From assembly GCA_002269645.1 (NCBI GenBank), contig NIVC01003109.1:54943-118942 (forward strand): a stretch of 64,000 bases of DNA. Reading direction: 5' to 3'. Positions within the stretch are counted from its first letter, which is position 1, and each line of letters starts with the position of its first letter. The DNA is from Macrostomum lignano (taxonomy: Eukaryota). The notes under the pieces were generated by a model. The model worked only from the letters and a program-made list of their open reading frames with translations, searched no databases and was not told the DNA's origin. Positions 6,404 to 64,000 of this stretch are shown here, in pieces. The position numbers and the translations under genes were made by a program.

Positions 6404-6582
6404 GAGATGCGTAGCTTAGCGCCCGATTCTCGCCGATGTGTTCAGAGGGATGCACCGCGGAAAAGGCGAGTCAGTGGCTGATGATCTGTCTTGATTGTGA
6501 AGTGACGGCCATGAAGGAAGTGCTTCAGTCGAGCGACGGCCCAGAAGATGGCGAGGGCCTCGCGCTCAATATTTGAATAATT
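6404..6582 (-). pseudogene. Disrupted RNase H core, second unit
   Basis: Same three lesions as 2203-2381. Confidence 0.9.
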
Positions 6583-9364: not shown

Positions 9365-13034
<3,670 letters not shown>

Positions 13035-15074: not shown

Positions 15075-20697
<5,623 letters not shown>

Positions 20698-40364: not shown

Positions 40365-41095
40365 GATAAGTCGCAAAAAGGATCAGGTAAGTCGCAACAG
40401 GAATCAGGTAAGTCGCAAAAGGGTTAGGTAAGTCGCAAAAAGGATTAGGTAAGTCCCAAAAAGGATTAGGTAAGTCGCAAAAGGATCAGCTAAGTCGCAA
40501 AAGGGTTAGGTAAGTCGCAAAAGGGTTAGATAAGTCGCAAAAGGGTTAGGTAAGTCGCAAAAGGATCAGCTAAGTCGCAAAAGGATTAGGTAAGTCGCAA
40601 AAAGGATTAGGTAAGTCGCAAAAAGGATTAAGTAAGTCGCAAAAAGGATTAGGTAAGTCACAAAGGGTTAGGTAAGTCGCAAAAGGATTAAGTAAGTCGC
40701 AAAAAGGATTAGGTAAGTCACAAAGGGTTAGGTAAGTCGCAAAAGGATTAGGTAAGTCGCAAAAAGGATTAAGTAAGTCGCAAAAAGGATTAGGTAAGTC
40801 GCAAAAGGGTTAGGTAAGTCGCAAAAGGATCAGGTAAGTCGCAAAAAGGATTAAGTAAGTCGCAAAAAGGATTAGGTAAGTCGCAAAAAGGATTAGGTAA
40901 GTCACAAAGGGTTAGGTAAGTCGCAAAAGGATTAGGTAAGTCGCATAAGGATTAGGTAAGTCGCAAAAAGGATTAGGTAAGTCGCAAAAGGAATAGGTAA
41001 GTCGCAAAAAGGATTAAGTAAGTCGCAAAAAGGATTAAGTAAGTCGCAAAAAGGATTAGGTAAGTCGCAAAAAGAAGCAACTAAGTCGCAATAAG
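40365..41095. repeat. 20-22-bp subterminal array (TAGGTAAGTCGCAAAAAGGAT)n of the middle-tier element
   Basis: Direct inspection. Confidence 0.95.
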
Positions 41096-42095
41096 AGGGA
41101 AGTAAGTCACAATCAGAGGCAATCAGGGGGTAGTAGGTGCAAGTGTGGCAGGAGAGCAAAAACAGAATAGAAGCCTTCAACCACAGACAAGATCTTTGAA
41201 ATCAGAAGCCCGCGTCATTTCTTAAACTCTGGAGCAGGGGTTGGCAAACTCCGGCTCGCGAAGCCCCTCTATCTGGCCCTCGCCCCTCGGGTTCTTTGAA
41301 ACTTCCTAACTACGAGTAGCAAGGTTGGTGTCTCTTCAACTCTCATCTCTCTCTTCTTCTCTACCTTGCCTCCCCTCTTCTCTCTCTCCCCCTTTTCCCT
41401 CTTCTCTCTCCTCTCATTTTTACTCTCCTCTCTTCTCCCCCTTTCTCTCTACCCTTTCTCCTCAATGCCCTCTTCTCTCCTCTTATCTTCAGCAAAAATA
41501 TGTGCATATTTTCTTACTTCAAAGTAGAGGGAATAGAAGATTAGAGATAAGCAAACAGAGGAGAGGCGAGCGATGCGATGGGAGAAAAGATAGAAGAGGA
41601 GAGAAAAGCTGAGGGAGGAAAAAGAGATGAGAGAGAAGAGGAGATGAGAGAAAAGAGGAAAGAAAAGATGATGGATGAGATCAGAAGAGAGGAAAGAGGA
41701 AAGAGGAGAGAGTAGATGAGAGACGAGAGGATAAAGAGGAGATGAGAGGAGAGTGAAGAGAGGAGAGACGAGAGAGTAGAAAAGAGAGGAGAGATAATGA
41801 GAGAGTAGAGTGGAGAGAGACGAGAGGGAAGATAAGATGAGAGAGTAGAGTGGAATGGAGAGAGACGAGAGGAGAGATAAGAATGTAGAGAGGAGACAGA
41901 AGAGATAGGAGAGGAGAGGAAAGAGAGGAGAGAGGAGAGGAAAGAGAGAAGGGATAAGGGATGAGAGAGAAAAGAAAAAGAGGATGAGAAGATTGAGGAA
42001 TGGAGAGAATTTGCAAAGGCCTCAAATCTTAGTTCAACATGCATTACTCCCATCTTTGCCTTTTTCCTAACTGTTAACAAGTTTTTGTTTGAGCA

Positions 42096-45016: not shown

Positions 45017-47604
45017 TTTGAGCATGACTTCAAATTTAGAATCTACGCAAAAATAGTTCCGGGAATTAGAATTCAGTGGTTTAAAAATCTGTGGGTTTTC
45101 ACAGCTTGTATCTCTACTGGATTCGTATTCTGCATCTGATGAGCCATCTGAATCAGGGCTCTCATCTTCCATGCCAAATCGTCTAGCAAATCGTTCTTGA
45201 GCTATAGGTCACACTGTATTCACTTCACTTACTTCTGGACATTCATGAATCATGACTTTTGTAGTATGCTCACTACACTGTACTGACAATTTACTAATTG
45301 CTTCATGCCGCCACTAGATGACACTGATTAGCTGTTATAAAAACGCGGAATCTGCACGCAGGACTAATTAGCTGGCGAGGCATTTAGCTTTAAAAAATAT
45401 GGTCATAGTTACTCCTGCCGTTTATCTAAAGTTTTTGCTTGGCTCTTTCATAGGTAAGTCGCATTTTTTATCGAAAACTAAGTCGCACGGCCAGCGTAAT
45501 TTCAGAAGTTGCGCATGTATGTATAGTTACCTCTTACCATTTACCCAGACTTGCATTAATTTTGCCTTAGGGTTTCTTTTATATGTAAATCACACTTTTG
45601 GCCAAAAACTGTTGCATTTTTTTGTTAAAACTAAGTCACATGGCCAACTGAATTCTGGAGGTTGCGCATGCATGTTCTATGGAGTGACTAGCTTGCCACC
45701 ATTGTCAATAGGTCAAACATTGAGCTTGTGTGTCATGCTCTAGATATTGATTGCCAAGCTACAATGCAAGAGCTATCAACCATTATTGGCATCTCATCAA
45801 TGATCATTCACTCAATCCTGATGTAGGGTTTAGAGGGCATTATTATATAAAACATAAAGTTCTTCAATACACTCAAACTTGTCCTCTTCCAAAGAATAGA
45901 AAATCAATCATTGTGATGTTTATGACCTCAGAACTATTTTTGGCCGCACTCTGCAAACCACCAGACTAGTTGAAACCATGATCCATTGAAGGTATTTTTA
46001 CTTTGTTAGATGAACCTATAGAGAAAAGAGGAAATTAAAAATAGACTTGCAGTTTTATTAGCTTTGTTATCTAGATATTGATAAATATCTGATAAATATT
46101 GATAAATAATTAAAAAGTTAAACAAATTGTGAAACTTACCTGTTGGGCTTTCTTTGAGTTTGCAGTTGACCATAGCACAGATAAGACTTGTAGTCTGGAA
46201 TAAAATTAGGCAAAAATGTTAAATAAGATATGATTTATTTATTAATTATAAACATTATTTCAAACCTCTTCTAAGTCAAATAATAGCGAAATATTAATTT
46301 AAAGCAATATGAAATGCTTATTTCAATATTTTAAAGAGTCACTAAGAGTCCTTGTGGTTTTCAGGTCTTTATAGTTGAAAGCCTTCATGCATTTTAAAAA
46401 GAATAGATCTTTATAAGCTAAAATTCTTTAAAATACATTTTAAATTGTTGGAGTACCTTATAAGTCAGTTTATTCACTTGCAAAAACTAATTAATTCACT
46501 CACTGATGTTCTTTGTCCACTTACTGACGTCACTTGTCCACTGATCGATGCCATCAGTAAGTGGACATTTTGTGCTATTTTAATAATATGGCACCTCTTA
46601 CAAACACTATTTCAATCAATTTCCTACAGTAAAACATGGTAAAACACACTCAATTTAGATAGGAATAGTGGGAAGAAACATAAAATACTAGCAGAACTGC
46701 TACACAATAATAAATAGCCATTGGTAAGTGGAAACCTTGTGCTATTAGAGTATTGCTCAAAAAATGTTTTGCAATGTTCAGAAACAAATATCTTCATTAG
46801 TGTCTAAGAAATTGCAGGACAATATGAATGCACAAGAAATTTTAAAATATAATAATACAGATACAGCCGACTTACCAAAATTAAATTCTAGGCATCGATC
46901 AGTAGACACAATAGGTGTTGATAAGTGGAAATCAAAAATGGAAGGCATACTTTGCTTTAAAAAATCAAAATGGCTAGCACTTTTTAAATAATATTAAGTA
47001 GTAAAACAAAACAACTATATGATAAAAAGAAAAAATGACACCAAAATAGAGTGTCCCTATTTACTACAAATAAAATTATTGTTATTTAATAGGAAGATGC
47101 TTCAAAAATGACATTCATTTTGTTGAATTTTCCGAACTTTTACACAATAAAAACTTTGCATTTCAACTTACCAATCTTTTAAATTATGTTTTAAATAGAA
47201 ATTAGTTGTCTAATCTATTTTTTATTGTTATGGTGCTGCAAAAATTCTCTGTTTGGTAAAAATTTTAGAAAGACACGAAAAAAATTTTCTATATTCATTT
47301 TTGGATTCACCTATAGGTGATTTTGATTTTTAGGATTTTATGATTATATAAGAGTGGGATTGAAATTTTTATATAATATATTGCCATATATAGAGGTTGG
47401 ATATAATCAAAATTTTAGGGATTGGGTAGGTGGGATTAGGATCCCAATTTTTGCTTAGAAACTAGGAGTTCAGGATTAAAATTAGAAACCCATATTTTTC
47501 CTTTATTTGCTAAGAAAACTCAAATTAAATGACAGTTAAAAGATGCTATCAGAGAGTTGTTATACTATGTCCTGCAGAAAGTTGGTTGAAGATGCAGTGG
47601 CTTA

Positions 47605-48038: not shown

Positions 48039-51000
48039 ATGATTATTCAGTGGTCTCCTAATCTTGCAACATGGGTTAGAACAAGAATCAAGACCTGTCT
48101 ATTTGTTGTCAACTCACTACTGCTAGTAGGTGGAGCTCTGTTGCTGGGTGTTTGCTGGCGCGTGTTCACCCAGTTTGATGCAATGCGGTACTCATCCCTG
48201 GGTCTAGTGAATATCAACTCTATTGTGCTCATCCGAGTTGGTTTTGTCTTCTGTGCATTTCTGGCTATTTTTATAGCTGCACTCGGATGCGTTGTAGCTT
48301 GTAAAGAAAGTTGTGGATTTGTTCAGCTGGTAAGAATTTGTTTTACTTCTCAATTGTCACTTTATTGCTCTGAAAATTGTCACTTAAGTGTCGTGAGAAT
48401 TGCTATTTAATTGCCATAAGAATCGTCACTTTATCGCTCTGAGAATCGTCATTTTATCGCTCTGAGAATCGTCACTTTATCGCTCTGAGAATCGTCACTT
48501 TACCGCTCTGAGAATCGTCATTTTATTGCCCTCTGAGAATCGTCACTTTATCGCTCTGAGAATTGTCACTTAATCGCCCTGAGAATCGTCACTTTACCGC
48601 TCTGAGAATCGTCATTTTATTGCCCTCTGAGAATCGTCACTTTATCGCTCTGAGAATTGTCACTTAATCGCCCTGAGAATCGTCACTTTACCGCTCTGAG
48701 AATCGTCATTTTATTGCCCTCTGAGAATCGTCACTTTATCGCTCTGAGAATCGTCACTTTATCGCCCTGAGAATCGTCACTTTATCGCTCTGAGAAGAAT
48801 CGTCACTTTATCGCCGTGAGAATCGTCACTTTATCGCCCTGAGAAGAATCGTCACTTTATCGCCCTGAGAATCGTCACTTTATTGCCCTGAGAATCGTCA
48901 CTTTATCGCTCTGAGAATCGTCACTTTATCGCTCTGAGAAGAATCGTCACTTTATCGCTCTGAGAATCGTCACTTTATCGCTCTGAGAAGAATCGTCACT
49001 TTATCGCCCTGAGAATCGTCACTTTATTGCCCTGAGAAGAATCGTCACTTTATCGCTCTGAGAATCGTCACTTTATCGCTCTGAGAAGAATCGTCACTTT
49101 ATCGCCCTGAGAATCGTCACTTTATTGCCCTGAGAATCGTCACTTTATCGCCCTAAGAATCATCACTTTATCGCTCTGAGAAGAATCGTCACTTTATCGC
49201 CCTAAGAATCATCACTTTATCGCTCTGAGAAGAATCGTCACTTTATCGCCCTAAGAATCGTCACTTTATCGCTCTGAGAATCGTCACTTTATCGCCCTGA
49301 GAATCGTCACTTTATCGCTCTGAGAATCGTCACTTTATCGCTTTGAGAATCGTCACTTTATCGCTTTGAGAATCGTCACTTTATCGCCCTAAGAATCGTC
49401 ACTTTATTTCTCTGAGAATCGTCACTTTATCTCTCTGAGAATCGTCACTTTCTCTCTGAGAATCGTCACTTTATTGCTCTGGTAATCGTCATTCAATACC
49501 TAAATGTAATGGCCTTTAAACTGGTCCATAAATGTTCACCTGATTCACCTTAGTAGTATTTCCTTAGTTAGGTACCCCAGCTTACATGACGATCGCAATT
49601 ATAAAACAAGGCGTATTTATTGTGCCTAACTGCTAATTTTAGTTAAGCATACGCCATAAAGTGTTTAAGTGGTTTATTAGTTTGAAATCTATCGCAACTA
49701 ATTTTGTTTACACTCGACTTAATTTAATTTTTATTTATAACTAACACTGCCTGACAGCACCTGGCTCTGCTGGCTCTGCTATTGATGGCTCACCTGTCGG
49801 CTGTGTCATTAGCGGCAGCCAGTGCCAGTCGGTATCGAACCATTGACGACTCTAAACTGTCTCTCAAAAGCATCAGAGATCAGTATGGATTGTTTAGTAG
49901 AAATTCTACTGCGGATGGTGACGTCACTGCGGCTGTTGATACTTTTCAAGCTGAGGTAAGCTGTTTTTATCAACGTTGCTGTCACGTTTTTTGCAGCGCA
50001 CTTTTAAGTTTGTTGCGTGAACTTGAATTTGATGAATTTTGATGAATTGTGACGTAAATTCATTAAGTTGTACCGGTTGCGTACATGCATGCACTGGAAT
50101 GTAAATTGCCTTTTGTTCTAAATGATACAGATTTAAATCAGAAGATAGTAGACAGTGCAGTTCTCACCGAACTTCGCTCCCCTCCCATCTTCTCCCTCTC
50201 CTCTCTTTCCCTGTGACCTTTCCTTCCTATCATCGTCTCCCCCTCATCTCTTATCTCCCTCTCCCCATCTCCCTCTCCCCATCTCCCTCTCCCCATCTCC
50301 CTCTCCCCATCTCCCTCTCCCCATCTCCCTCTCCCCATCTCCCTCTCCCCATCTCCCTCTCCCCATCTCCCTCTCCCCATCTCCCTCTCCCCATCTCCCT
50401 CTCCCCCATTTTCTCCCATCTCCCTCTCTCCCATTTTCTCCCATCTCCCTCTCCCCCATTTTCTCCCATCTCCCTCTCCCCATCTCCCCATTTCTCTCCC
50501 CCCATCTCCCTCTCACCACTTGTCTCCCTCTCCCCCATCTCCCTCTCCCTATCTCCCTCTCTCCTATATCCATCTAACCTCTTGTGTCCCTCTTCCCTTT
50601 CTCCCTCTCACCTCTTCTCTTCCATCTCCCTCATCTCTTCTCTCCCATCTCCCTCATCTCTTTTCTCCCTTCTCCCTCATCTCTTCTCTCCCATCTCCCT
50701 CATCTCTTCTCTCCCATCTCCCTCATCTCTTCTCTCCCATCTCCCTCATCTCTTCTCTCCCATCTCCCTCATCTCTTCTCTCTCATCTCCCTCATCTCTT
50801 CTCTCCCTTCTCCCTCATCTCTTCTCTCCCATCTCCCTCATCTCTTCTCTCCCATCTCCCTCATCTCTTCTCTCCCATCTCCCTCATCTCTTCTCTCCCA
50901 TCTCCCTCATCTCTTCTCTCCCATCTCCCTCATCTCTTCTCTCCCATCTCCCTCATCTCTTCTCTCCCATCTCCCTCATCTCTTCTCTCCCATCTCCCTC

Positions 51001-52148: not shown

Positions 52149-52269
52149 CCTGCATCTTGTTCTAAAAATATTTAATTCTTTTAGCTTTTTTGTGATAATT
52201 TACTTATCAGTAGTGTGTTTATTGTTTTTTTTTTAGTCGAATTTTTCATACTTTTTTACATGAATTTGG

Positions 52270-54469
52270 TGTAACCGCCCTTGTCGCCTGTCCGCTCCGT
52301 AGAGAGACGAACGCATGGCTAGAGGGGGCAATGACCGTAGGCTGCCTAGGACCGGGCAATGACCTGACGGACCTCCAGCACCAGACTGTCCCGCCCACAT
52401 GATTAGTAGCTTTGGTAGCGCTTCGTGACCAGAGGGCCAAGGACCCACATGGACCCCACCTGTAGCCAAGGTGCAATAGTTGGTCACTCGGTCATGGTAT
52501 GACCGAGTGGCTGCCACCACTCTATGTGACCTGGCGCACCTGGATCTTTCTACCAGACCTCTCGAGGCTAGAGCCCCGCCTGGATTGGTTACCAGGGGAT
52601 TTAGGCTAACAGGGGAGACGCATGCAGCCGAGTACAGGGACTCTGCTTGGGGCATGATCGGGAACTCTGGGCTCAATCCTGGAGGATTTCTCAGCAGGGG
52701 ATCCTTTGTGGCTGTGAGCGAGGCTGACTTGCGACTTTGATTACTAAGAGTAGTATGAGGCGAACATGTACTATCTACAGTTTAGATTGCTCAGGGCGAA
52801 GGGACGCGTCAGCATGGGGTTGCAACCTTCCTACTGCCATTCTGTGCCAAGACTCGCTAATCCCTCTACTGCACGCACACGCGGCCCCGCAGCACGCACT
52901 CACAGGCGGGCTGTGCACGGGGAGAGGCCATTAGCTTACCCAAACTTCCTTATGCTTTGCCACCCCGGGGAAAGGCTTAGCAAGCCATGAGTGAAATGAT
53001 GGTGAAAGATTGAATAATGATGAAGTTAGTTAATAGTTAATAATTAGGCCCTTAGGCAAATAAGCAGGCAATTAGGCGGCTTCACTATTGAGTAAGATAC
53101 AGCAAAAGATACGGTATCACAATTGGCTCAGCTCTCTAATCAGACAATGGAAAATAGGCAAACCCCGGATAAGCAAAGGCAATTAGAGCACAAATTAGTA
53201 GCAGGAACTTACCGGCAGCTGCACAGAGAGAGAGAGAGGCGGAGTGACCGAGGGCGGCTGTAGGCTGCAGTCAGGCAGACGGTGAAGCGGCGATGCGCTG
53301 GAGCGACGAGGCGCTGATGTAGATCAGGCGATGCTGATGATGCTGGGCGGTATCAGACCGCTGGCCGATAGGCGAGCTCACTTGGGGAGCTAAGGATAAC
53401 TTGGCGGTAACAGACCGCGGACCGGCAGGGATTCGTCTTATAGACGAATGGGTCAGAACTCAATCTGACAGCAAGTCCAAAGAAGGACGAGGAGAGGAAC
53501 AGAGATAAACTCAGTTGAGTATTCTCATGCCGAAATCGCTTCCTTTTATAGACCTCACAGCCGCCTCCTCAAGGTCGTTACCATGGCTCCCTCTCTCTGA
53601 TTGGCTGCCGGCAGAATGACGTCAGAATGAGTCATGATGAGAAGCATGAGACCGGCATAGCAACATGAGAAATCGGGAAATTGCGCAATCCGGAGGTGGG
53701 GTGGGGGGATAATTGGCGCAGCGGGTGGTCGCGAAAGTGTTGCGCAAGCAAACATTGAGAACAATAGGGCTGGGGTCGAGAACAAAGGAATTGGAAATCG
53801 GGGATAATTGGGGAAAACTGAGAACAATGGAAAAGTAAACATTGGAGAAAAGGTGATAATTAGGTGCGAAAACGAGAACAAAAGAAAGAGAAAATCGGAG
53901 AAAATGTGATAATTGGTGGGGGTCGAGAGAACAAAAGAAGCAAAACCGAGAACAATAGAAGCGGAGGTGGGGTGGGTGTCACATGAGAAATTTGGGAAGG
54001 AGAACAATAGCGTGAGAAAAGGTTGCGCAAGAGAGGGGGATGAGTCATCGAGGGGGAGAAGGGGTCACACGACTTGCGTCACCGTTTGGGAGTTTGAGAG
54101 GGGATGGGGAGACGGTGAGCACACAAAGTACTGTAAGTAGACACAGGGAAAGAGGGGACAGCGCAGGAAAAGAGTGCAGAGGGAGACAAAAAAAGGGAGG
54201 AGGTAGAGAAAGTACAGGAAGAATAGGGCGGGAACAGAAGAGATAGGGTAGAGGGGGAGGTACAGAAAGGGGTAGGGGCTCCGGAAAGGCAGGTGTGGCG
54301 GCAGGAGAGACGGGACCAAGGCAGCAGGAGGGGTGCAGCAGAGCGGGAGTCTCCAGGCCCGGTCGGAGACCTGGCCGAGTCTCGACAGCTCTGTGCAGAG
54401 GGTGCACGGGATAGGAGGCACTTTCGAAAAAGTTCCCATGCCCTATCCCGCGACCAGAGCGTGGTTACA
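52270..54469 (-). repeat. 3' LTR, 2200 bp
   Basis: Termini TGTAACC...GGTTACA. On the minus strand, CCAAT at about 53598-53602 and TATAAAA at about 53544-53550. Confidence 0.92.
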
Positions 54470-55076
54470 TCACACCCCCACTGCCTTTTGTGACGGAACT
54501 GGTTCCGTCATCATCACTGCCCAACATGGAACCACACAGACGGGAGCGGGATCTCAACCGAACGTGAAATCACAGAATTAACAAACCGCGAGCGGGAATG
54601 GAAAAAGGCGATAAAATAGAGGGGATAGCAATAAATTCACAAAACGAGATACATAGGTTGGAGTGCAATACAGAATTTCAAAAATTTCAACTGTTGCTGT
54701 GGCTAAAGTGGGAGGGGGGAAACACAGACAGCGCAATAGTAGGGAGAAAAATAGCGAATTGTCAACAATAAATTATCATAATTGGATAGAAGCGCAGCTG
54801 GGAAAGAGAGGAAACGGGGAGGGTGAGGGAAGTGGGGAAAAAGAAGGGGGGAAGGGTTGCTAGCACACAGCCAAGGGCAGAGCCTCGGGGAGAATGACAA
54901 TTACACAGGGGAAAAATACTAATGCAGCGCAGTAAATTAATAAGCTAATTTCGCCGGGAGTTCAACCGCACGGAGGCCTAGCGTCCTTGAAGGCTCGGAC
55001 CCCGCTTCAGCCAGTCAGAGGGCTTCGGGGCGATCGGTTGTAGGCTGGGAGGCGCCGCGCCGTGCGCTGGCCACTG

Positions 55077-55190
55077 TATAAAAGGCGCCACTGATAACGG
55101 GAGCCGGCTGCCTGCAACCTACACGGAGTCGCAGTTTCCAACCAAGGCACTCAGCGCGATTTTCCAAACTATACAACTACTCGGTAAGTC
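55077..55190 (+). promoter_or_regulatory. Candidate antisense promoter and short first exon inside the LTR element
   Basis: TATAAAA at 55077-55083 after a GC-rich stretch; donor CG/GTAAGT at 55184. Confidence 0.45.
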
Positions 55191-55531
55191 CCATCACCAA
55201 CCTGATTTCCTTTCGCCTATACGTTAAACGAAATCTACCCACTCGCCATGCCTTTCGTTTTAAACTGAGCCAATTGCAGTAATAATATATGGCCTTTCTT
55301 ACGGTAAAAGTAGTGAGCAGCCAACACAGAGCCATTTTTAGGAATTTTTAGGATAATGACACAACAATGACTCGTATATTGGTTATTAAAGTTTAAAAAT
55401 GAATATTATGGAAGAACCGAATATTAATAGGATAATTTCACACACACACACACGACAAACACACAACGCAAGGGGGCGGAAAGGCGGGTCGGACCGGCCG
55501 GCGGACGTCGCTCAGCAGGCAGTCGGCATCC

Positions 55532-56881
55532 TTACTCGAAATGGGCCTCTTGATTTAGCTGGTACGGGCCATATGCCGCCACCTGAGCCATGGCACTTGC
55601 CCATGCTTCCACATAACGTTGGGCTGCCGCGGCCGTGAGCACCACTCGGTGCCATCGGCTAGGCAAGATGTCGTTGCGCAGCACGCCCCTCAACTGCGGC
55701 AGAGTCGGGATGCCCAGGGCTTGGCATTGGACGACGAAGGCCGCATTCCGTACTTGTTGCAGCCGTGTCAGAGTTGGTGCAGACAGGGGCGGCTGCGCGA
55801 TTGCAAAATGCTGCAAAGTGCCACGGGGCACCTCGGCCAGGCCCGCGTAGCCGGGCTCAACGTCGCCCAGGGCCGCCAACACCCACCCACAGCGGCGATT
55901 GAACCGTTGCGAGAGAGTGGCGGCCCAGGCCACTGTGGCAAACGGCGCATAGAGGAGGGGCGCAGAGGCCGGCGCGGAGGCCGCAAGAATGCCGTCGTGG
56001 ATGACGAGAGCCTCTTCCCATTCGGCGCCCTCGCTCAGGAAGCCCCAGAGCAGCCCTGGCAGGTCCGCAGGAAGCATGCCCCAGCGGCTGGCCAAGCTGG
56101 CCAGGCCAATCAATAGCCGGGCTCTCTGGGTTGGTGTCAGTTGTCTAGTCATCTGAGAGGAGGCTGCGCAGCTGATGATCACCTTCTTGTAGACCGGCCG
56201 ATCGCAGGTGCTGAAGATTGCTGTGATGGGGGCACAGGACGGCGGCCGGGCTGTCAGGTGCGATGGTTCCTCATCCACAACCTTGCGGAGGAACTTGGCG
56301 GCCTGCCGGACTAGGTCGCCGAGGGCGTATTTGTAGGCGCTCTGGGCCGCTGCCTCGATGTACATTAACAGCGTATTGTCAACCAATCCCAGCAGGGCCG
56401 CTTTTGACAGGATGAGCAGACAGGGCCGGTCCAGGTTGTCGCGAAGTTGGCGCTCTAGAGTCGCATGCCTGTCCTCGGCCTGGAGTGGGCCATGATAGGA
56501 CTCAAGCCCGACCCAGTGCACCAGATCCCTAGCTGTCGCCGAAGGTTCGCCAGCCACCTGACCCCAATCGACTTCTTCTCTTTGCAGGGCGATGTCCACA
56601 CTTCGGCGGCTGTTGGGCAGAACATCACGCAGGCGGCGGGCCGCCTCGCCGAATTCGGCCGCCATGTCCGAAATGTCCGCGGTGTCGCCCCCAGCATTGG
56701 CCGGGTCGATTGTCTCGTCACCTTCTTCGACCCTGGCGGAGGCCGCCGCTGGCGGCTCGGGGCCGTCCTCCGCCTCTTGGATGGCGTCACGGGGCCGCTT
56801 TCGGCTAACTGGGCTGGCAGGACGCTCAGACGGTAAGCTGGAGCATAGCTGAATTCGATTGATGGTAGGCTTCGTGTCCAT
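55532..56881 (-). CDS. 449-aa orphan protein carried by the LTR element
   Basis: Long uninterrupted GC-rich ORF; N-terminal RKRPR (NLS-like) and acidic disordered region; no signal peptide or clear TM; no family recognised. Confidence 0.8.
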   Translation of the reverse strand: MDTKPTINRIQLCSSLPSERPASPVSRKRPRDAIQEAEDGPEPPAAASARVEEGDETIDPANAGGDTADISDMAAEFGEAARRLRDVLPNSRRSVDIALQREEVDWGQVAGEPSATARDLVHWVGLESYHGPLQAEDRHATLERQLRDNLDRPCLLILSKAALLGLVDNTLLMYIEAAAQSAYKYALGDLVRQAAKFLRKVVDEEPSHLTARPPSCAPITAIFSTCDRPVYKKVIISCAASSQMTRQLTPTQRARLLIGLASLASRWGMLPADLPGLLWGFLSEGAEWEEALVIHDGILAASAPASAPLLYAPFATVAWAATLSQRFNRRCGWVLAALGDVEPGYAGLAEVPRGTLQHFAIAQPPLSAPTLTRLQQVRNAAFVVQCQALGIPTLPQLRGVLRNDILPSRWHRVVLTAAAAQRYVEAWASAMAQVAAYGPYQLNQEAHFE

Positions 56882-56969
56882 GTCAAGCTGGATAGTTCAT
56901 AGAATGCTTCAGCGATTGAAGGACAGAATGATTTCTCTGATTGATGATTTCCAGCTCTGGCAGGCGTGG

Positions 56970-57095
56970 GTCTTCTTATAGTGCCGGGGCTGGCTTCCCA
57001 TTGGTTGAGCACATTGGGAGGCACACCTGCTGCGGCCGGGGTCGCCGTTGGCTTGGGACCGCTCGCTCTAGTCTCCGTGCGCTCTGATTGGCTGG
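56970..57095 (-). promoter_or_regulatory. Candidate internal promoter for the 449-aa ORF
   Basis: On the minus strand, AGCCAATCAG (about 57084-57093), AACCAATGG (about 56999-57007) and CTATAAGAA (about 56973-56981), roughly 95 bp upstream of the ATG. Confidence 0.55.
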
Positions 57096-57811
57096 TTCCG
57101 CCGCTTCCTGTTTCCTCACCTGTGAGCAGGGGGCAGACCCGAGACCACCTCCGGTCGCGCCCGCGGCAGATCCGTACTCCAGCCGACAGAGATCGCACTC
57201 CCACCTCACATGCACACATTCAGATCAGGCACACAAATTAATTTGGTTAATATGAATAGAAGAGGGATTTGGGAGATTAGACTCCGGAGGATAAATGATG
57301 ATGCGGCCCAACTCCCTTCGATTTCTTCCTTCAACGCCACGCGCACGCAGTTCTCATCCATGCCTCCGAGACCCTCATAAACTTAACAGCCGAAAGAATT
57401 CGAAAGAGGAATTAATCATTAATTTGACTGCCACCAGTTTGATGTACTATTATAAAAGAGAAAGGGGAACCTACCACCATCTTGGCGCATTACCAAAGAA
57501 AAGAAAAGGAGGATCAGCCACCATTTTGAGAGAGGTTGCTAGGGAAAACTGCCACCAATTGCCCTTCTACCAGAGGGGAGGAAGACGAAAAACTGCCATC
57601 CCTTAGAGGTGTATCATTAAAAGAAGGCGGGGAAGAAGGCTACCACTACTTGATCACCTAGAGCTCAAGGGAAGGAGAGGGAATGAAGAAAGGAAGAAAC
57701 CCCCAGGAAGGCCACTACCACACGCCATAAAGTTAAAATCCCCATCTATCTACATCCTAATACCCGGCTAGTTCCCTACTTCTATTTCATCCCTTAAATC
57801 CTCATTTTCAG

Positions 57812-58218
57812 GATTCCGGCCGCTAGTAGCCGAGCCCATCCTTGAAGAGGAGTCCGACTACGAAGCGCCCGAAGACAGCCATTCAGAGCCGGACGCCCCC
57901 TCTGATTCTGGGCCGGCTGCGCCATCTGGTGACATAGGCGCCGCGGCTCCCGGGCCATGCGACCGCCGGGCCGCCAGCGAACCAGCGTCCGGGGCCGGTT
58001 GGCATCCGGTACCACCGCCGTTGTCAGCCCGAGCGCACGCTCCGCCGCCGGTCGCCGCGGTGACGCCCGTGGCTGCCGCTCCACAGCCCTTGCCAACCCC
58101 TGTGGTGGAGACCGACGGCTCCTGGCATTTGGTCGTGCTGTCGACGGCCCTAATAGCCGGTCTCACAATGCACTGGCTACTGCTCTTGGAGCTATTTCTG
58201 CGGCTTCCCAACTGCTGA
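57812..58218 (+). CDS. Candidate antisense exon encoding an acidic/Pro-rich peptide with a C-terminal hydrophobic segment (134 codons, no in-frame ATG upstream)
   Basis: Acceptor CTCATTTTCAG at 57811; open frame FRPLVAEPILEEESDYEAPEDSHSEPD...WHLVVLSTALIAGLTMHWLLLLELFLRLPNC*. Confidence 0.45.
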
Positions 58219-58807
58219 TGCTGGTGGTTCTTAATGCTTACTTACTAATTCTGAACTATCTGTCCCCATAACTTGACTTTAATTACTTACCTGACTTTAC
58301 ATTGACTAAACCACTGGCCTACTCTAAACTAATTGCTGCCCCATTTGCCTGATAAACTTAATTACATTGAATGCCCCCCCCCCTATTGCCTCATCGAAAC
58401 CAATTAAAAGTTTCCCAAAATCGGACTTTCACAAAGTGTGAACAAACACACGAAATCAGACCTAAAGGTGCTAATTTCCTACGGTCCCAGACTTCCATTG
58501 TTCCCAGAAAATCTTGAACAGCGGGGCAGGACCTCCTGTGGAGCAGACCCATAGAAATTTTACTAGTTTCCAAGTTAATATTTACTGATAGGGAATTAAC
58601 GCATACTGTACGGGCCTAATTTTCGAGCTAAAATCTTAGATATTTAAACAACACCAACGAGCACGAGGTCACAACATAAATTCGAGTAATAGAGGGCATA
58701 CGTAAATACGCGAAAAGCGGTCTCCAACGGGGCAACACGAGCAAAATTTCGACACGCGAATCGGGGGGGGGGATTAAGCAATCACTGGCTAGCTACCGAT
58801 CTGTTAC

Positions 58808-59332
58808 TCAGCGGGGGTCGAATGGGAGACTCACACCTAGCAAGTAAACCTTTTCTGTTCGATAGTCTATGATAGCATGCGTACTGGCTAGAAAAGCACT
58901 ACCCAGGAGGGAAACTGCTGCTGAATTGCCAACGACCAGAAAGAGGATTCTCACCTCTTCTAGCCCAATAACTGCTGTGAGGGTGGCCTGGCCTAGCATC
59001 TCTAATTCATTGCCCGTGTAGGACACGGCCTTCACACATGGGGGCTCCAGGGCCTCCACACTCTGTCCGGTAATTTTAGTAAAGTCTTTGACTGTTAGCA
59101 AAGACAGCGCACTGCCCCCATCTACCAGGAGGCGGGTGGGAACATTCTCAATTGGCAACTCTACAACAATATCTCTCCCGCGTTGTCCTCCAGCTGGTCT
59201 TGGCTGATAGAAATCGGGTACCTTCTCAAATCTAAACTTCTTGCTGGGCGGACGTGGCAGGTTAAGCTGGGCCCTAGAGAGGGAACGGGGCTGAGTTCGG
59301 GCCGGGCCATTCAGCCCTCCCACGGGTTTCCC
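58808..59332 (-). CDS. Retropepsin-type aspartic protease in the -1 frame, ending in TGA
   Basis: RLLVDGGSALSLL active-site motif (DGG variant) and SLLGSAFL. It overlaps the gag end at a slippery heptamer. Confidence 0.85.
   Translation of the reverse strand, partial: GKPVGGLNGPARTQPRSLSRAQLNLPRPPSKKFRFEKVPDFYQPRPAGGQRGRDIVVELPIENVPTRLLVDGGSALSLLTVKDFTKITGQSVEALEPPCVKAVSYTGNELEMLGQATLTAVIGLEEVRILFLVVGNSAAVSLLGSAFLASTHAIIDYRTEKVYLLGVSLPFDPR
59270..59332 (-). promoter_or_regulatory. -1 programmed ribosomal frameshift signal
   Basis: In-phase G GGA AAC (59332-59326), followed after a short spacer by the stem GGGCTGA/TCAGCCC with possible loop-to-downstream pairing. Confidence 0.8.
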
Positions 59333-60756
59333 GAACCCGGGGGCTCTTCAGGCGTGGAAGGAGGAGGCATCAGAGCTTGCGCGCGCAGCTGGGCGAGCCT
59401 CTCCTGCCTCTCCCTGGTAGCCTCGTCTAACATATCTCTGCCCCACTCCTCTAAATCTTGCCTATGGCGATCAGGTGGCGCACGAAGCTGCAATTGCTGC
59501 TGCTGCACACCCGGCGCCGGCGGCGTGGGCGCCTCCTGAATTGCAAGCGGCGGGGGCTGGGGTTGGCGCCAGTTCCTACTGCTATTAGAGCCGCCCTGCC
59601 CCTGCCTCCAGTTCCTGTTGGGAGTGGCGGGGCGAGGGGGCCTCATCTGCTGGGGCAGCTGGGCAACAGACTCTGCTGTCGCCTTCATAGTTTCATTGAG
59701 CTGCACCAGCTGGTTGCGCAGATCCTTTTGCGTTTGCTCTAGCGCGCCCAACCTCTCTTGCATCTCTGATAGGCCGTCACCGTCCTCCTCCGTCTCGTCA
59801 GCTTCCTGGTTCACCATCCTGACCCACTTGCGAGGGGGCCTGGGTGGCTGCTGAGGTTGCAGACGGACTTCGGTGCGGGACTCAGACCTGGGCGGGCCAC
59901 TACTGTCCCATTTCCCGGCTAAGTCTGCGGCTTCTAACAGGGCTTGCTGCTGTTCTAACACCTGCTCAATTGTCTGCCAGCGACGGCTCAACAGATCTTG
60001 TCTGACCTGGCGGGGGAGCTTAGCGTGTTCCAAGTAGGTGTACACGATTTCTTGTTCTCTCTGCTCACCCTGAATCTGAGGAAACATGGCCGTTATCTGA
60101 GATCTTATCATAGCAGCAAAAGCACTATGTGATTGGCCGGGTTTCTGGCTCAGATTCTTCAGCTTATTTCTCTTAGCCAGATCAGTGTTGGCCTCGCCCA
60201 ACTGCTCTCCTAATCTAGATACGAACTGCTCAAAGGGCAATTGCCCGTCCAATCCTAAGGCTAAGTTCTGAAATTCACCTGGGAGGTGCGAGATGAGCAC
60301 CTGCTTCCTAGCCTGATCTCCTACAGTTCTCTCCGCGTCCAGCTTGTAGATCATTCTCTCTACCCATTGCACAAAACAGTGTTCGCCGGGAGAGAACTTT
60401 TCTACGTAGATTTTCGGCCTCTGGGCGTCTTGGCCCATGTTTAGCTGGTTAAACGCATTGGCTATAGCGGCAACTAAGTCTCCTAGCTGCGGGACTGCCT
60501 GAGGAGGATTCTGGGCTGCGTCCGGGGGAGCAGCGGCGGCTGCTGCGCCACCCTGATTGGGAGCGGGAGCTGCTACTCCTTCATCTGGTTCCTCAACTAC
60601 TACTGCTTCTGGAGGCTGAGGGACCTGGTTACCAGCGGCTGCGGCCATTGCGGCTGCGGGGGCGGCAACTGCTGGGGTGTCAGCGGCCGAGGGTGGTTGA
60701 CCAGGGGCGTCTGCGCACACAGCTTCTACGACCCTATCTCCACGCGCCCGTGACAT
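59311..60756 (-). CDS. gag: Gag-like capsid protein (about 481 aa from the likely ATG at 60756), without a CCHC knuckle
   Basis: Ala/Pro-rich N-terminus; retrotransposon-gag helical region (KFSPGEHCFVQWVERM ... LSQKPGQSHSAFAAMI); coiled coil; Arg/Gln-rich tail. Confidence 0.85.
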   Translation of the reverse strand: MSRARGDRVVEAVCADAPGQPPSAADTPAVAAPAAAMAAAAGNQVPQPPEAVVVEEPDEGVAAPAPNQGGAAAAAAPPDAAQNPPQAVPQLGDLVAAIANAFNQLNMGQDAQRPKIYVEKFSPGEHCFVQWVERMIYKLDAERTVGDQARKQVLISHLPGEFQNLALGLDGQLPFEQFVSRLGEQLGEANTDLAKRNKLKNLSQKPGQSHSAFAAMIRSQITAMFPQIQGEQREQEIVYTYLEHAKLPRQVRQDLLSRRWQTIEQVLEQQQALLEAADLAGKWDSSGPPRSESRTEVRLQPQQPPRPPRKWVRMVNQEADETEEDGDGLSEMQERLGALEQTQKDLRNQLVQLNETMKATAESVAQLPQQMRPPRPATPNRNWRQGQGGSNSSRNWRQPQPPPLAIQEAPTPPAPGVQQQQLQLRAPPDRHRQDLEEWGRDMLDEATRERQERLAQLRAQALMPPPSTPEEPPGSGNPWEG

Positions 60757-63103
60757 GTGAATGCCGGATAGCTGGGGGAGTACCCACCACCGGGAAGGAA
60801 AAGAAAAGAAAACCGGGGCAACTACAGGTAAAGACCGAAAAGTTGATCCGAAACACACAAACACACTCACACACACACAAACACAGACAAAACCCACACT
60901 TGCGGCGTCGAAGAAAACAAATTGAAAAACGGGTGGCTCCACATAATTCCATTTAGGCAGTCCTAACGGCTTCACTCGGCAAAGCACACTGACTCAAACT
61001 GCGGCTACCACTACCAGTTGTCTATGGCACATCCTGACAGGGAAAAATTGGCTATTCAGAGAGACTTGACCTTCATTTTGCGGCCATGCTAGGGAACCCA
61101 AATGCCGACCGTAAACGGACTTACGGCACCTGTACAAATTCTCCCCTAGGGTTGCGCGCCGGACCCCATTTCCTTAAGAAAGCTACTACGAAGAAGCGTT
61201 GGCGCCTGGACCCAAAAACCCAAGTGGCGGGAGCAATCCCCATGGAGGTCCTCCCACTTTACTGCCCTTGCACAGCCGGAAAACCGTCGGAGTCCAGTGG
61301 GGCTTCCACCTCAGGACTACCAATCTTGTACACGCAGCTTCACAAAAGGCGGGAATCCAGCTCCCCTACGTCTAGCAGAATCCACAAAAACCAAGACCTC
61401 CCCCTTCTGTTCAGAGCGAAGGCGCGCAGCGGGAGTCCAGACTAAACTGTCCCCGAAGTTTTCAGGTTAGGCGGATTACAAGCCTGAAACTCTCGCCCGC
61501 TTTCCTAGGATAAACAGACCTAAGTGAGTATCTTCCTGAAATGCTTGCCCCTCCGATACTCCACCTTTGCTGCAGCTCGAAATAGCATACTTGGGACCTT
61601 TATCTGATGGCGGAGAAAGTCCTACAGTTGTCAGCCTCTCCACTTTACTGTACTTGAACGCCCGGTTCTACCAGGAGACAGCGGTACCTCCATCTAGGTT
61701 ATTCCAAGTTGCCAGAGACGTCAACCCGTCTTATTGACCTTGCGGGGCACTGGGGTGGCACTCTATGTACCGGGGCTTTACATTAGGGGACTGCATGCAA
61801 CCCTGCGTCTAAGCGCTTAGTGGGCTGCAGTGGCCAGAGGGGAAAAGAGTTGCGCAATAGCGCCTTCCTGGGCCAGGCTGACAAGTCGGGCAGGAGCGCC
61901 GTTCTACCGGGTCGGGCTGATTGGCACACCCACCTCCCCTATCAGACTGACAGCAGGGGGAGGAATTACTAAAGGAGGAGAATGCAGCAGGAAACATTAC
62001 GAGATCACTGGGGCCACCAGACTTCCAGTACACCATTCCAATACTCACTGAACTCCACTATCAATAGGATACTATGGGATCTACTATTTCCAGCCACTGC
62101 ACCAGCCCAAATGCAACCAAAGCAGTTACTACCGGGTCTGCAATACAGTGGGGAGAGTCAGCAGACACGTTGGGATCGAATCCCAGCCATGAAGGCACCA
62201 GGGGTTACCGCAGAATTCAGGTCCGGGCTGATCGCAGGTATTCCATAGGAGGTGACACTTTTTTTAGCCCGAGATTTTTGAGTCACACTGATACCCTACA
62301 GAGATACAATCACACCGCTATTCCCATTCCTGCGAGACTTTGGTATCCCCCAATGTTTCCAAGGCCATGACTACTGCTTCCCTTACTATGCATATATAGC
62401 GAGTTCCCCATAGCCCTTGATAGCTGTTCATTCTAATGGACAAACAAAACACGCTCCGGTCTCTACGCATTTCTAGGATTAACTGAGCGATCAGGGAGAG
62501 CGACTGTTACACTCCCCCGAGTAAAAGAAAGAGGTAGGACAAAGGAAAGAAATGCTTCGCTTCCAGCTTCCCTGTGCTTGCGTGATGAGGCTTCCGTACC
62601 TGGCTGGCTGTCCACCTCAACACTCACACAGTTCTGCTGTAGGCTAGGCGAGAGAAAGAAAGGGAGGGGAAATAAAGCATATTACCATGAAATAGAAAGT
62701 GAGTCCGGAAAATTCACTTTCGCAGTTCTTCACACACTCCGTTACCAGGTAGCTATTCTGATTGTAATCAAATCCGCTCGTCTACCACTTCACACTTTCT
62801 AGCGCTGAAACTGATCGGCTAAATTAATTTTAAATTGAATCAGGGGCTTTTGGCGAATGAATGAATTTGGAAATTTCGAATGAATTGAACGAATTCGCAG
62901 CCCGAAAAATTTGAAAAGTTACATTAATATTTTTGGATTTTGTTGCCTCACGCCATGGGAGAAGAGAATGACGATTGGCGATTTTTACGATTGGTAGATT
63001 TAGACATGGCACTCTTTGCGCTTCGGCCACCATTCTGAGGGATGCCACAGGTGCGCTTGTCACATCTAAACCACCAGTCCGAAACTCAGCGCTTTTGCAC
63101 CAG

Positions 63104-63121
63104 ATCCCACCGCTGCCACCA
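63104..63121 (-). promoter_or_regulatory. Primer-binding site for tRNA-Leu
   Basis: TGGTGGCAGCGGTGGGAT, 6 nt from the LTR end GGTTACA. Confidence 0.9.
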
Positions 63122-63127
63122 TTTTGA

Positions 63128-64000
63128 TGTAACCGCCCTTGTCGCCTGTCCGCTCCGTAGAGAGACGAACGCATGGCTAGAGGGGCAATGACCGTAGGCT
63201 GCCTATGACCGGGCAATGACCTGACGGACCTCCAGCACCAGACTGTCCCGCCCACATGATTAGTAGCTTTGGTAGCGCTTCGTGACCAGAGGGCCAAGGA
63301 CCCACATGGACCCCACCTGTAGCCAAGGTGCAATAGTTGGTCACTCGGTCATGTATGACCGAGTGGCTGCCACCACTCTATGTGACCTGGCGCACCTGGA
63401 TCTTTCTACCAGACCTCTCGAGGCTAGAGCCCCGCCTGGATTGGTTACCAGGGGATTTAGGCTAACAGGGGAGACGCATGCAGCCGAGTACAGGGACTCT
63501 GCTTGGGGCATGATCGGGAACTCTGGGCTCAATCCTGGAGGATTTCTCAGCAGGGGATCCTTTGTGGCTGTGAGCGAGGCTGACTTGCGACTTTGATTAC
63601 TAAGAGTAGTATGAGGCGAACATGTACTTCTACAGTTTAGATTGCTCAGGGCGAAGGGACGCGTTAGCATGGGGTTGCAACCTTCCTACTGCCATTCTGT
63701 GCCAAGACTCGCTAATCCCTCTACTGCACGCACACGCGGCCCCGCAGCACGCACTCACAGGCGGGCTTTGCACGGGGAGAGGCCATTAGCTTACCCAAAC
63801 TTCCTTATGCTTTGCCACCCCGGGGGAAAGGCTTAGCAAGCCATGAGTGAAATGATGGTGAAAGATTGAATAATGATGAAGTTAGTTAATAGTTAATAAT
63901 TAGGCCCTTAGGCAAATAAGCAGGCAATTAGGCGGCTTCACTATTGAGTAAAATACAGCAAAAGATACGGTATCACAATTGGCTCAGCTCTCTAATCAGA
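63128..64000 (-). repeat. 5' LTR (partial, cut by the window end)
   Basis: Matches 52270-53140 with about 8-9 differences. Confidence 0.95.

What the first reader, a model, noticed from the sequence alone, without database searches (positions are those of the whole stretch)
52270..64000. Large RT-less LTR element: capsid plus frameshifted protease, with pol replaced by independently promoted cargo genes
Seen: 2.2-kb LTRs about 99% identical, an intact PBS and PPT, a 2.4-kb leader, open gag, and an open protease with a canonical -1 signal and a clean stop. I find no RT, RH or IN remnants in the 4.3 kb before the 3' LTR. That space holds AT-rich spacers, a 449-aa ORF and a candidate antisense ORF. 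Known: Gag-only non-autonomous elements (plant TR-GAG) and LARDs exist, but I do not recognise this Gag+PR+orphan cargo layout in animals. Inference: a recently mobile satellite-like retroelement that makes and matures its own capsid, borrows RT/IN from a helper and delivers accessory genes. Loss of pol from a family that already carried the extra ORFs is the alternative.
Basis: partly seen in the sequence, partly recalled or inferred. Interest (0 to 1): 0.86.

Follow-up and report, generated by a model that had tools for sequence, protein, structure and literature searches.

The report
Pol-less flatworm LTR retrotransposon with orphan gene
This is a young, about 13-kb LTR retrotransposon, probably in a flatworm genome, that keeps a gag-like gene and a frameshifted protease but has no reverse transcriptase or integrase; in their place sits one conserved gene of unknown function, so it is a helper-dependent element of a broadly known kind, not a new class.

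Summary
The element lies on the minus strand. Its parts are a 2,206-nt 3' LTR (52267-54472), a 5' LTR cut by the window end (878 nt visible, 98.98% identical), an 18-nt tRNA-Leu-type PBS, a PPT, a 2.3-kb leader and a 482-aa gag-like ORF. A canonical G_GGA_AAC -1 slippery site leads into a complete retropepsin domain, which ends in a clean stop. Six-frame Pfam scans and tblastn with more than 100 Ty3/gypsy polyproteins find no RT, RNase H or integrase. A control pol scrambled at 40% of sites was still detected.

- Only one cargo gene holds up, ORF449. It belongs to an orphan family with 34%-identical relatives in three public sequencing runs.
- ORF449 relatives show third-position-biased substitutions and share a CCAAT x3 plus TATA-like upstream layout.
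- The antisense ORF is unsupported.
- The protease has DGG instead of D[T/S]G, so self-maturation is doubtful.
- Gag is called by position only.
- Copy number, target-site duplication and the helper could not be tested.

Gag+protease-only LTR subfamilies, LARDs and accessory-ORF elements are already known. I rate this a new variant of a known kind, of moderate interest.

The parts
63125..64000 (-). 5' LTR, its U5-side 876 nt only; the rest lies beyond the window end (predicted outer end near 65330)
   Evidence: 98.98% identical to 52265-53144. The inner terminus GGTTACATCA is at 63134-63125.
63104..63121 (-). Primer binding site TGGTGGCAGCGGTGGGAT, 3 nt (AAA) after the LTR end; complementary to the 3' end of a tRNA-Leu(AAG)-type tRNA
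   Evidence: Sequence. An exact 18-mer recurs next to another LTR at 28052-28035, against 0.01 expected by chance. The tRNA-Leu assignment comes from my own knowledge of the tRNA 3' end; no tRNA gene is present in the window.
60760..63103 (-). Leader of 2,344 nt with no credible ORF
   Evidence: No Pfam hit in the three minus-strand frames or in two plus-strand ORFs.
59311..60759 (-). gag-like ORF, 482 aa from the first ATG (the ORF is open from 60987); Ala/Pro/Gln-rich, with no CCHC knuckle
   Evidence: (GC1/2/3 .67/.47/.58). No homolog or domain was found, so the assignment rests on position between the leader and the frameshifted protease.
59326..59332 (-). -1 slippery heptamer G_GGA_AAC, in the gag zero frame, 13 nt before the gag stop
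   Evidence: Read directly. The downstream hairpin GGGCTGA...TCAGCCC is possible but not better than shuffles.
58808..59325 (-). Protease ORF in the -1 frame; the retropepsin domain is encoded at 59152-58823, the active-site triplet D-G-G at 59122-59114, and the TGA stop at 58810-58808
   Evidence: Pfam gag-asp_proteas E 0.019. hhalign to a Ty3/gypsy profile gives 83% probability, E 8.9e-6. BLASTP to the gypsy-type polyproteins P0053 and P0081 gives 29% identity, E 6e-10 and 7e-10, with LLVDGGSA aligned to MLLDTGSA.
57221..58807 (-). Non-coding spacer: an AT-rich stretch, a 400-nt block of 75% GC (58230-57830), and a degenerate ~42-nt tandem carrying five PBS-like (A)TGG(T)GGCAG motifs (57600-57430)
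   Evidence: No Pfam hit in any frame.
56882..57095 (-). Promoter-like region of ORF449: CCAAT at 57091, 57017 and 57004; TATAAGA at 56980-56974; ATG in a good Kozak context 99 nt further on
   Evidence: At least 3 CCAAT within 250 nt upstream was reached by 16 of 5000 local shuffles. The same layout occurs in homolog contig L002, reached by 29 of 5000 shuffles. These are motif matches only; no transcription data exist.
55532..56881 (-). ORF449, an orphan accessory gene: a disordered N-terminus with an RKRPRD motif and a conserved C-terminal 340 aa
   Evidence: Homologs P0106, P0103 and P0105 come from Logan assemblies; the match is 34% over 341 aa, E 3e-43. No Pfam or PDB match.
54490..55531 (-). 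3' untranslated or spacer region, alternating AT-rich, GC-rich and pyrimidine-rich blocks
54475..54489 (-). Polypurine tract AAAAGGCAGTGGGGG, followed by TG and the LTR start
52267..54472 (-). 3' LTR, 2,206 nt: TGATGTAACC...GGTTACACCA, with six CCAAT boxes (53916-53604) followed by TATAAAA at 53550
   Evidence: Its ORFs have no Pfam hit.

Best explanation
This is a non-autonomous LTR retrotransposon, helper-dependent because it lacks pol. The host is probably a macrostomid flatworm, and the element integrated recently.

Proposed mechanism:
- Its RNA would start in the 2.2-kb LTR at a CCAAT x6/TATA promoter.
- The RNA carries an 18-nt PBS for a tRNA-Leu and a PPT.
- It encodes a gag-like protein. 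Through a -1 shift at G_GGA_AAC it also encodes a Gag-protease fusion.
- Reverse transcription and integration must be done by RT/RNase H/IN from a related autonomous element. That helper would have to recognise the same PBS, PPT and LTR ends (TGATGTAACC...GGTTACATCA).
- The place of pol is taken by 4.3 kb of unrelated sequence. Its one real gene, ORF449, belongs to an orphan protein family kept under purifying selection in related samples.
- ORF449 is probably transcribed from its own CCAAT/TATA promoter inside the element and ends in the 3' LTR.

What is shown: the anatomy, the absence of pol, the protease homology, and the conservation of ORF449.

What is inferred: trans-mobilisation, the capsid role of the gag ORF, internal-promoter use, and any function of ORF449. 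My guess is a nuclear regulatory or host-interaction factor, because of its basic RKRPRD motif and acidic disordered N-terminus.
For: - LTR pair, terminal inverted repeat, PBS and PPT are present.
- The slippery site is in the correct frame and the -1 ORF is open.
- The protease domain is homologous to Ty3/gypsy proteases.
- No RT, RH or IN appears in six-frame Pfam scans or tblastn, with a positive control.
- LTR divergence is only 0.6%. Pol therefore cannot have eroded in place, and the 4.3 kb of non-pol DNA is best explained as part of the transposed RNA.
- The D-G-G active site needs two substitutions from ACN. At 0.6% divergence it was almost surely already present when the element moved. 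This fits protease activity not being needed in cis.
- ORF449 has a coding-type GC pattern and full-length homologs at 34% identity, E 3e-43.
- Eight of 11 substitutions between two 98%-identical homolog copies are at third codon positions (binomial P about 0.009, my own arithmetic).
- The CCAAT x3 plus TATA-like layout occurs upstream of ORF449 in both the window and L002.
- The same sequencing run that holds an ORF449 relative (SRR31628394) also holds the closest Logan relative of the window's neighbouring gypsy element. The best named relative of that gypsy element is from Macrostomum lignano, at 68% identity.
Against: - Only one copy is visible. No other copy or fragment lies in the remaining 52 kb.
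- The host genome could not be searched, so propagation as a family is unproven.
- The target-site duplication cannot be checked because the right end is outside the window.
- The gag ORF has no detectable capsid homology and no zinc knuckle.
- The protease motif is non-canonical.
- No helper was found. The neighbouring gypsy element has different LTR ends and no TGG PBS.
- The promoter call rests on motifs only.
- The genomic context of the ORF449 homologs is unknown, because the contigs are only 1-1.9 kb long.
Confidence: 0.6

Rival explanations
1. A one-off defective provirus. A single aberrant recombinant RNA, produced by template switching during reverse transcription and replacing pol with a co-packaged RNA, was integrated once and has never propagated. 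The anatomy is the same, but there is no 'satellite' lineage.
For: - Only one copy is visible.
- The breakpoint sits 4 codons after the end of the protease domain, as expected for a deletion or recombination in the PR-RT linker.
- ORF449 (GC 0.635, GC3 0.71) differs in composition from gag (0.573; 0.58) and the protease (0.533; 0.52), which suggests a mosaic origin.
- The protease has a D-G-G motif.
Against: - ORF449 comes with a promoter-like region, which a captured mRNA would lack.
- The ORF449 family is multi-copy and partly degenerate in related samples, as a transposon gene would be.
- All cis signals and all three ORFs are intact.
Confidence: 0.22
2. Transduction of a cellular gene, as in maize Bs1 or acute transforming retroviruses. 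On this view ORF449 is a host gene, captured with its promoter by read-through or recombination, and the element is a helper-dependent transducing derivative.
For: - ORF449 has its own CCAAT/TATA-like region and a good Kozak context.
- Its composition is distinct from gag and the protease.
- Purifying selection in homologs would also fit a cellular gene.
Against: - No homolog exists among 1.84 billion representative proteins, apart from three short contigs from one sequencing project.
- No Pfam or PDB relative exists.
- One homolog (L003) is truncated and carries stops. Another (L002) is a frameshifted 98% copy of L001. That is a pattern of repeats, not of a single-copy gene.
- ORF449 has no introns.
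Confidence: 0.1
3. Post-integration rearrangement. A normal pol-containing element integrated, then lost pol and gained foreign DNA through a nested insertion plus a deletion.
For: The block structure of AT-rich and GC-rich segments could reflect several insertions.
Against: - LTR divergence of 0.6% leaves little time for two or more large events.
- The 4.3 kb has no terminal inverted or direct repeats, target-site duplications or poly(A) tails that would mark a nested element.
- No pol remnant is left on either side.
Confidence: 0.05
4. An assembly or window artefact. The two repeats would belong to different insertions, or a collapsed assembly would have joined unrelated pieces.
For: - The region is repeat-rich, with minisatellites and a 100% identical tandem gypsy array at 1-9084.
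- The right LTR is incomplete in the window.
Against: The PBS lies exactly inside the right repeat and the PPT exactly inside the left repeat. The order and strand of gag, frameshift and protease between them are as expected for one element.
Confidence: 0.03

Closest known systems
Wheat Fatima (RLC_famc1) subfamilies 1.4 and 1.5: LTR retrotransposons with only gag and protease ORFs (PMC6097303)
   Same: They have an LTR pair and intact gag and protease ORFs but no RT or integrase. They amplified recently, and RT/IN are proposed to come from a sister subfamily.
   Different: They are Ty1/copia elements of plants. No accessory ORF or internal promoter is described. Here the helper and the subfamily structure are unknown.
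TR-GAG elements of plants (Chaparro et al. 2015; my own knowledge)
   Same: They are non-autonomous LTR elements that keep a gag ORF, a PBS and a PPT and lack pol.
   Different: TR-GAG elements are small (under about 4 kb), have no protease and carry no extra gene. This element is about 13 kb, with a 2.2-kb LTR, a protease and ORF449.
[quoted passage not shown] 2004, as summarised in PMC6431247)
   Same: Several kb of non-pol DNA lie between long LTRs, and the element is moved in trans.
   Different: LARDs have no open reading frames. Here three ORFs are intact.
Maize Bs1 and acute transforming retroviruses (my own knowledge)
   Same: Gag, and in some cases part of the protease, is retained; pol is replaced by acquired sequence; the element depends on a helper.
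   Different: Their cargo is recognisably cellular and is expressed from the LTR, often as a fusion. ORF449 has no known cellular homolog and has its own promoter-like region.
Accessory-ORF LTR elements: Ogre in plants, Burro in planarians, and the foamy-virus internal promoter (PMC6431247; the foamy-virus point is my own knowledge)
   Same: They have long LTRs, extra ORFs of unknown function, and in foamy viruses an internal promoter driving 3' accessory genes. Burro shows that flatworm LTR elements accumulate accessory genes.
   Different: All of these keep RT, RH and IN and are autonomous.
ta-TRIM of Echinococcus (PMC4558846)
   Same: It is a non-autonomous LTR retrotransposon in a flatworm.
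   Different: It is a miniature element with no coding capacity.

Membership tests
LTR retrotransposon (general) | Two direct long terminal repeats in the same orientation | tested here: met
   The repeats are 98.98% identical over the 878 nt visible. The outer 1.3 kb of the 5' LTR lies outside the window.
LTR retrotransposon (general) | TG...CA termini with short inverted repeats | tested here: met
   TGATGTAACC...GGTTACATCA, matching 10 of 10 positions.
LTR retrotransposon (general) | tRNA primer binding site next to the 5' LTR and a polypurine tract next to the 3' LTR | tested here: met
   PBS at 63121-63104 and PPT at 54489-54475.
LTR retrotransposon (general) | Target-site duplication of 4-6 bp flanking the element | not testable with these tools
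   The left flank reads AATTC in minus orientation, just outside 52267. The right flank is beyond the window.
Ty3/gypsy (Metaviridae) | RT phylogeny and the domain order PR-RT-RH-IN | tested here: not met
   No RT, RH or IN is present. Only the protease resembles Ty3/gypsy proteases. The superfamily can therefore only be suggested, not assigned.
Non-autonomous LTR retrotransposon with partial coding capacity (Fatima 1.4/1.5 type) | Intact gag and protease with no RT or IN | tested here: met
   The gag identity is positional only.
Non-autonomous LTR retrotransposon with partial coding capacity (Fatima 1.4/1.5 type) | Multiple copies at different loci and a related autonomous partner | not testable with these tools
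   The host genome is not in any searchable collection. There is no second copy in the window.
TR-GAG | Gag is the only ORF and the element is small | tested here: not met
   A protease and ORF449 are also present, and the element is about 13 kb.
LARD | The internal region has no coding capacity | tested here: not met
   Three ORFs are open, and two of them have homologs.
Transducing retroelement (Bs1 or oncogene-capture type) | The cargo is demonstrably derived from a cellular gene | tested here: inconclusive
   ORF449 has only three relatives, all on short contigs of unknown context, and some are degenerate.
Retropepsin (A2 aspartic protease) | The D-T/S-G-A catalytic motif and the later I/L-L-G-x-D-F/L motif | tested here: not met
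   The fold-level alignment is good, but the motifs read VDGGSA and LLGSAFL. The catalytic Asp is kept and the Thr/Ser is replaced by Gly.
Retroelement Gag (capsid) | Homology to a capsid domain (Retrotrans_gag, Ty3 capsid or retroviral CA) and/or CCHC knuckles | tested here: not met
   There is no Pfam hit. hhalign against gypsy gag gives 1.4% probability. There is no PDB hit and no CCHC motif.

The most novel reading that the evidence does not exclude
The element may represent an old lineage of pol-less 'satellite' retroelements in macrostomid flatworms. Such a lineage would persist by parasitising an autonomous partner. It would keep its own Gag, a protease that may be inactive, and a conserved accessory protein (the ORF449 family). 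That protein would be expressed from an internal promoter and would either help the element compete for the helper's RT and IN or blunt host silencing. In that case the 34%-identical ORF449 relatives in other samples would also sit inside pol-less LTR elements.
Probability: 0.15. Interest if true: 0.7.

Novelty: new variant of a known kind. Interest (0 to 1): 0.35.

Why it matters
If the layout recurs at many loci, it would be a clear animal example of an LTR element that has given up replication enzymes but keeps structural genes and a selected accessory gene. That would be useful for studying how helper-dependent retroelements compete with their helpers. It would also give the orphan ORF449 protein family a first biological context. 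As a single copy, it is an ordinary defective element with an unusual passenger.

Tried and rejected
- **Hidden or degenerate pol:** rejected. Six-frame Pfam scans of 54400-58899 and scans of the minus-strand leader frames and the LTR and leader ORFs found nothing. tblastn with 112 proteins found only the protease, with a scrambled-pol positive control.
- **Homologs of gag:** none found. I tried the word-indexed search of 5.8 billion proteins, PDB, a profile comparison with gypsy gag and a metagenome scan. The single full-HMMER job went to ORF449, so distant gag relatives may still exist.
- **ORF449 function:**
  - There is no Pfam, PDB or pol/gag similarity.
  - AlphaFold models with one and with four sequences had pLDDT 37.8 and 36.3. 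That is too poor for a fold search, so none was run.
  - The hit P0104 (E 2.7e-15) is a repeat protein matching only residues 74-119 seven times over. I treat it as spurious.
- **Other copies and the source contig:** exact-product look-ups for ORF449, gag and the neighbouring gypsy element's 761-aa polyprotein ORF (gag-PR-RT-RH) found nothing. A metagenome scan with the ORF449 alignment also found nothing.
- **Nested transposon inside the 4.3 kb:** no terminal repeats were found.
- **Neighbouring gypsy element as helper:** rejected, because its LTR ends differ and it has no TGG PBS.
- **Frameshift-stimulating structure:** it folds no better than shuffles.
- **Known RNA families in the element:** none.
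- **Identity of SRR316283xx:** not found in the paper library.
- **Nucleotide conservation of the ORF449 upstream region between the window and L002:** none. Only the motif layout is shared.


Full report
**What is there**

The finding lies on the minus strand. A direct repeat pairs 52265-53144 with 63123-64000. It is 98.98% identical over 881 columns, with 5 mismatches and 4 gaps, and it runs off the window end. Only 878 nt of the right copy can be seen.

The left copy is bounded on its inner side by a purine tract, AAAAGGCAGTGGGGG (54489-54475), followed by TG and TGATGTAACC. The exact inverse, GGTTACATCA, ends the right copy at 63125. GGTTACACCA ends the left copy at 52267. That gives a 2,206-nt LTR and a predicted element of about 13.06 kb.

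Three nucleotides inside the right LTR lies TGGTGGCAGCGGTGGGAT (63121-63104). From my own knowledge of tRNA sequences, this is the complement of the 3' end of a tRNA-Leu(AAG)-type tRNA. The same 18-mer recurs once more in the window. That copy directly follows an unrelated LTR-like block near 28 kb, against 0.01 matches expected by chance. This supports it being a primer binding site in use in this genome.

**Coding parts**

After a 2,344-nt leader without credible ORFs comes an ORF that is open from 60987. Its first ATG is at 60759, giving 482 aa and a stop at 59311.

Thirteen nucleotides before that stop, the zero-frame codons TCG GGA AAC contain the canonical X_XXY_YYZ heptamer G_GGA_AAC (59332-59326). 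The -1 frame is open from there to a TGA at 58810-58808. It encodes a complete retropepsin domain:
- Pfam gag-asp_proteas, E 0.019.
- hhalign against a 25-sequence Ty3/gypsy polyprotein profile, 83% probability, E 8.9e-6.
- BLASTP at 29% identity, E 6e-10 to P0053 and 7e-10 to P0081, two gypsy-type polyproteins. LLVDGGSALSLL aligns to MLLDTGSAVTIL, and LLGSAFLASTHAIIDY aligns to ILGADFLVAHGCVLDY.

The ORF stops four codons after the end of that alignment.

Two cautions apply:
- The active-site triplet reads D-G-G rather than D-T/S-G. The Thr/Ser of that motif builds the dimer 'fireman's grip' in retropepsins (established knowledge), so activity is doubtful.
- The 'gag' ORF has no detectable relative or capsid domain and no CCHC knuckle. 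It has a coding-type GC pattern and the right position, but its capsid nature is inferred.

The hairpin after the slippery site is no more stable than shuffled sequence, z = -0.3.

**No pol**

Between the protease stop and the PPT lie 4.3 kb.
- All six frames of 54400-58899, the three minus-strand frames of the leader, and the LTR and leader ORFs give no Pfam family, even at E<=10.
Nothing else apart from ORF449's own relatives scores below E 0.01.
- The same search recognises the neighbouring gypsy element's pol after 40% random substitution plus frameshifts, at E 5e-30.

The LTRs differ by only 0.6%. In-place erosion of 3 kb of pol is impossible at that divergence, and a plain deletion would not add 4.3 kb of foreign sequence. 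The simplest reading is that the RNA that was reverse-transcribed already lacked pol. RT, RNase H and integrase would then have come from another element (inference).

The same logic applies to D-G-G. It needs two substitutions, so it was almost certainly present at transposition.

**The passenger**

The 4.3 kb alternates AT-rich (32-45% GC) and GC-rich (60-75%) blocks. Only one ORF in it looks coding.

ORF449 (56881-55532, same strand as gag) has GC1/2/3 of .69/.51/.71. The other ORFs, including the plus-strand 57772-58215 candidate, have no usable start or have non-coding GC patterns.

The word-indexed protein search found no ORF449 relative. A full HMMER pass over 1.84 billion representatives found three hits. 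One, P0104, is a repeat protein that matches a 46-residue stretch seven times, and I discount it.

The other two, P0103 and P0105, plus the cluster mate P0106 (437 aa), are real relatives. ORF449 and P0106 share 34% identity over 341 residues, E 3e-43, with conserved HDG, YAPxAxxAWA and GW motifs.

They come from 1-1.9 kb Logan contigs of three runs of one project: SRR31628392, SRR31628394 and SRR31628403. One of these runs also holds the closest Logan relative of the window's neighbouring gypsy element. The best named relative of that gypsy element is from the flatworm Macrostomum lignano, at 68% identity. The host is therefore probably a macrostomid or a near relative.

The homolog contigs behave like repeats:
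- L002 is a 98.3% copy of L001 with a frameshift.
- L003 is truncated and carries stops.

Between L001 and L002, 8 of 11 substitutions inside the ORF fall on third codon positions (binomial P about 0.009, my own arithmetic). The family has therefore been under purifying selection.

No Pfam, PDB, gag or pol similarity exists. Two AlphaFold runs gave unusable models with pLDDT 36-38. The function is unknown. The N-terminus is disordered and acidic, with an RKRPRD motif, which hints at a nuclear protein (speculation).

**Own promoter?**

Upstream of the ORF449 ATG lie CCAAT boxes at 57091, 57017 and 57004 and a TATAAGA at 56980-56974. The ATG follows 99 nt later in a good Kozak context.

The homolog contig L002 has three CCAAT boxes and CATAAGTA 86 nt before its ATG. 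There is no nucleotide-level conservation between the two upstream regions.

Three or more CCAAT in the 250 nt upstream was reached by 16 of 5000 local-composition shuffles for the window and by 29 of 5000 for L002. The LTR itself has six CCAAT boxes before a TATAAAA at 53550.

A spliced or trans-spliced LTR transcript remains possible.

**Comparison with what is known**

- Gag+protease-only LTR subfamilies that rely on an RT/IN-bearing sister subfamily are described for the wheat Fatima family (PMC6097303).
- LARDs, and the capture of extra ORFs by LTR elements, are reviewed concepts. Flatworm LTR elements such as Burro are known to carry accessory genes (PMC6431247).
- Non-autonomous LTR elements exist in flatworms, for example ta-TRIM (PMC4558846).
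- TR-GAG, Bs1 and the foamy-virus internal promoter are further parallels (my own knowledge).

The element fails the definitions of TR-GAG, because it has a protease and an extra gene and is large. It fails the definition of LARD, because it has ORFs. It cannot be placed in Ty3/gypsy for lack of RT.

It works like a helper-dependent LTR element with partial coding capacity. What is particular is the combination, in an animal, of pol loss with a conserved orphan gene that appears to have its own promoter. I rate it a new variant of a known kind.

**What remains open**

I could not test copy number, the target-site duplication, the helper, the context of the ORF449 relatives, expression, or the gag fold. 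Rivals that stay alive are a one-off recombinant provirus (about 0.22), transduction of a cellular gene (about 0.10), post-integration rearrangement (about 0.05) and an assembly artefact (about 0.03).

Noticed in passing
window 1-9084: A Ty3/gypsy element sits in a head-to-tail tandem with a period of 4,201 nt, and the copies are 100% identical. Each unit has a 761-aa gag-PR-RT-RH ORF and a 451-aa integrase ORF, separated by one short LTR that starts TGTTGTATACC. Best database hit: Macrostomum lignano, 68% identity.
   Followed up: partly
window 28035-29000, minus strand: A second exact tRNA-Leu PBS (20 nt) directly follows an unpaired LTR-like block of about 0.95 kb. That block has a TATA box and two 72-nt repeats carrying TGACGTCA. 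No partner LTR is in the window. It lies in an intron of a CAP/SCP-domain host gene whose exon is at 29420-29105.
   Followed up: partly
window 57430-57600, minus strand (inside the element): A degenerate ~42-nt tandem repeat carries five (A)TGG(T)GGCAG motifs that mimic the first 9 nt of the element's own PBS. Its meaning is unknown.
   Followed up: no
window 40346-45522: A large inverted repeat pairs 40346-42095 with 44343-42594 at 95% identity. It is built largely of 21-nt tandem units and flanks a ~500-nt core. Its architecture resembles a foldback element.
   Followed up: no
window 9526-12341 and 15209-18484: Direct repeats of 81-98% identity lie about 5.6-6.4 kb apart, and both include TATC microsatellites. 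They could be a segmental duplication or another LTR pair.
   Followed up: no
window 23045-26940: A 3.9-kb minisatellite of a 17-nt unit (TTCAATTGGTTCCATGG, about 219 copies) produces long spurious ORFs.
   Followed up: no
window 48039-48410, plus strand: An ORF resembles the N-terminal exon of a tetraspanin, with two hydrophobic segments and a 'GCVVACKES' motif (recognised by eye only). The element is inserted about 4 kb downstream of it, after CT-rich minisatellites.
   Followed up: no
L001, L002, L003 (Logan contigs from SRR31628403, SRR31628392 and SRR31628394): The ORF449 family exists as several GC-rich (61-66%) copies in one sequencing project of unknown organism. One copy is intact, one is frameshifted and one is truncated.
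   Followed up: partly
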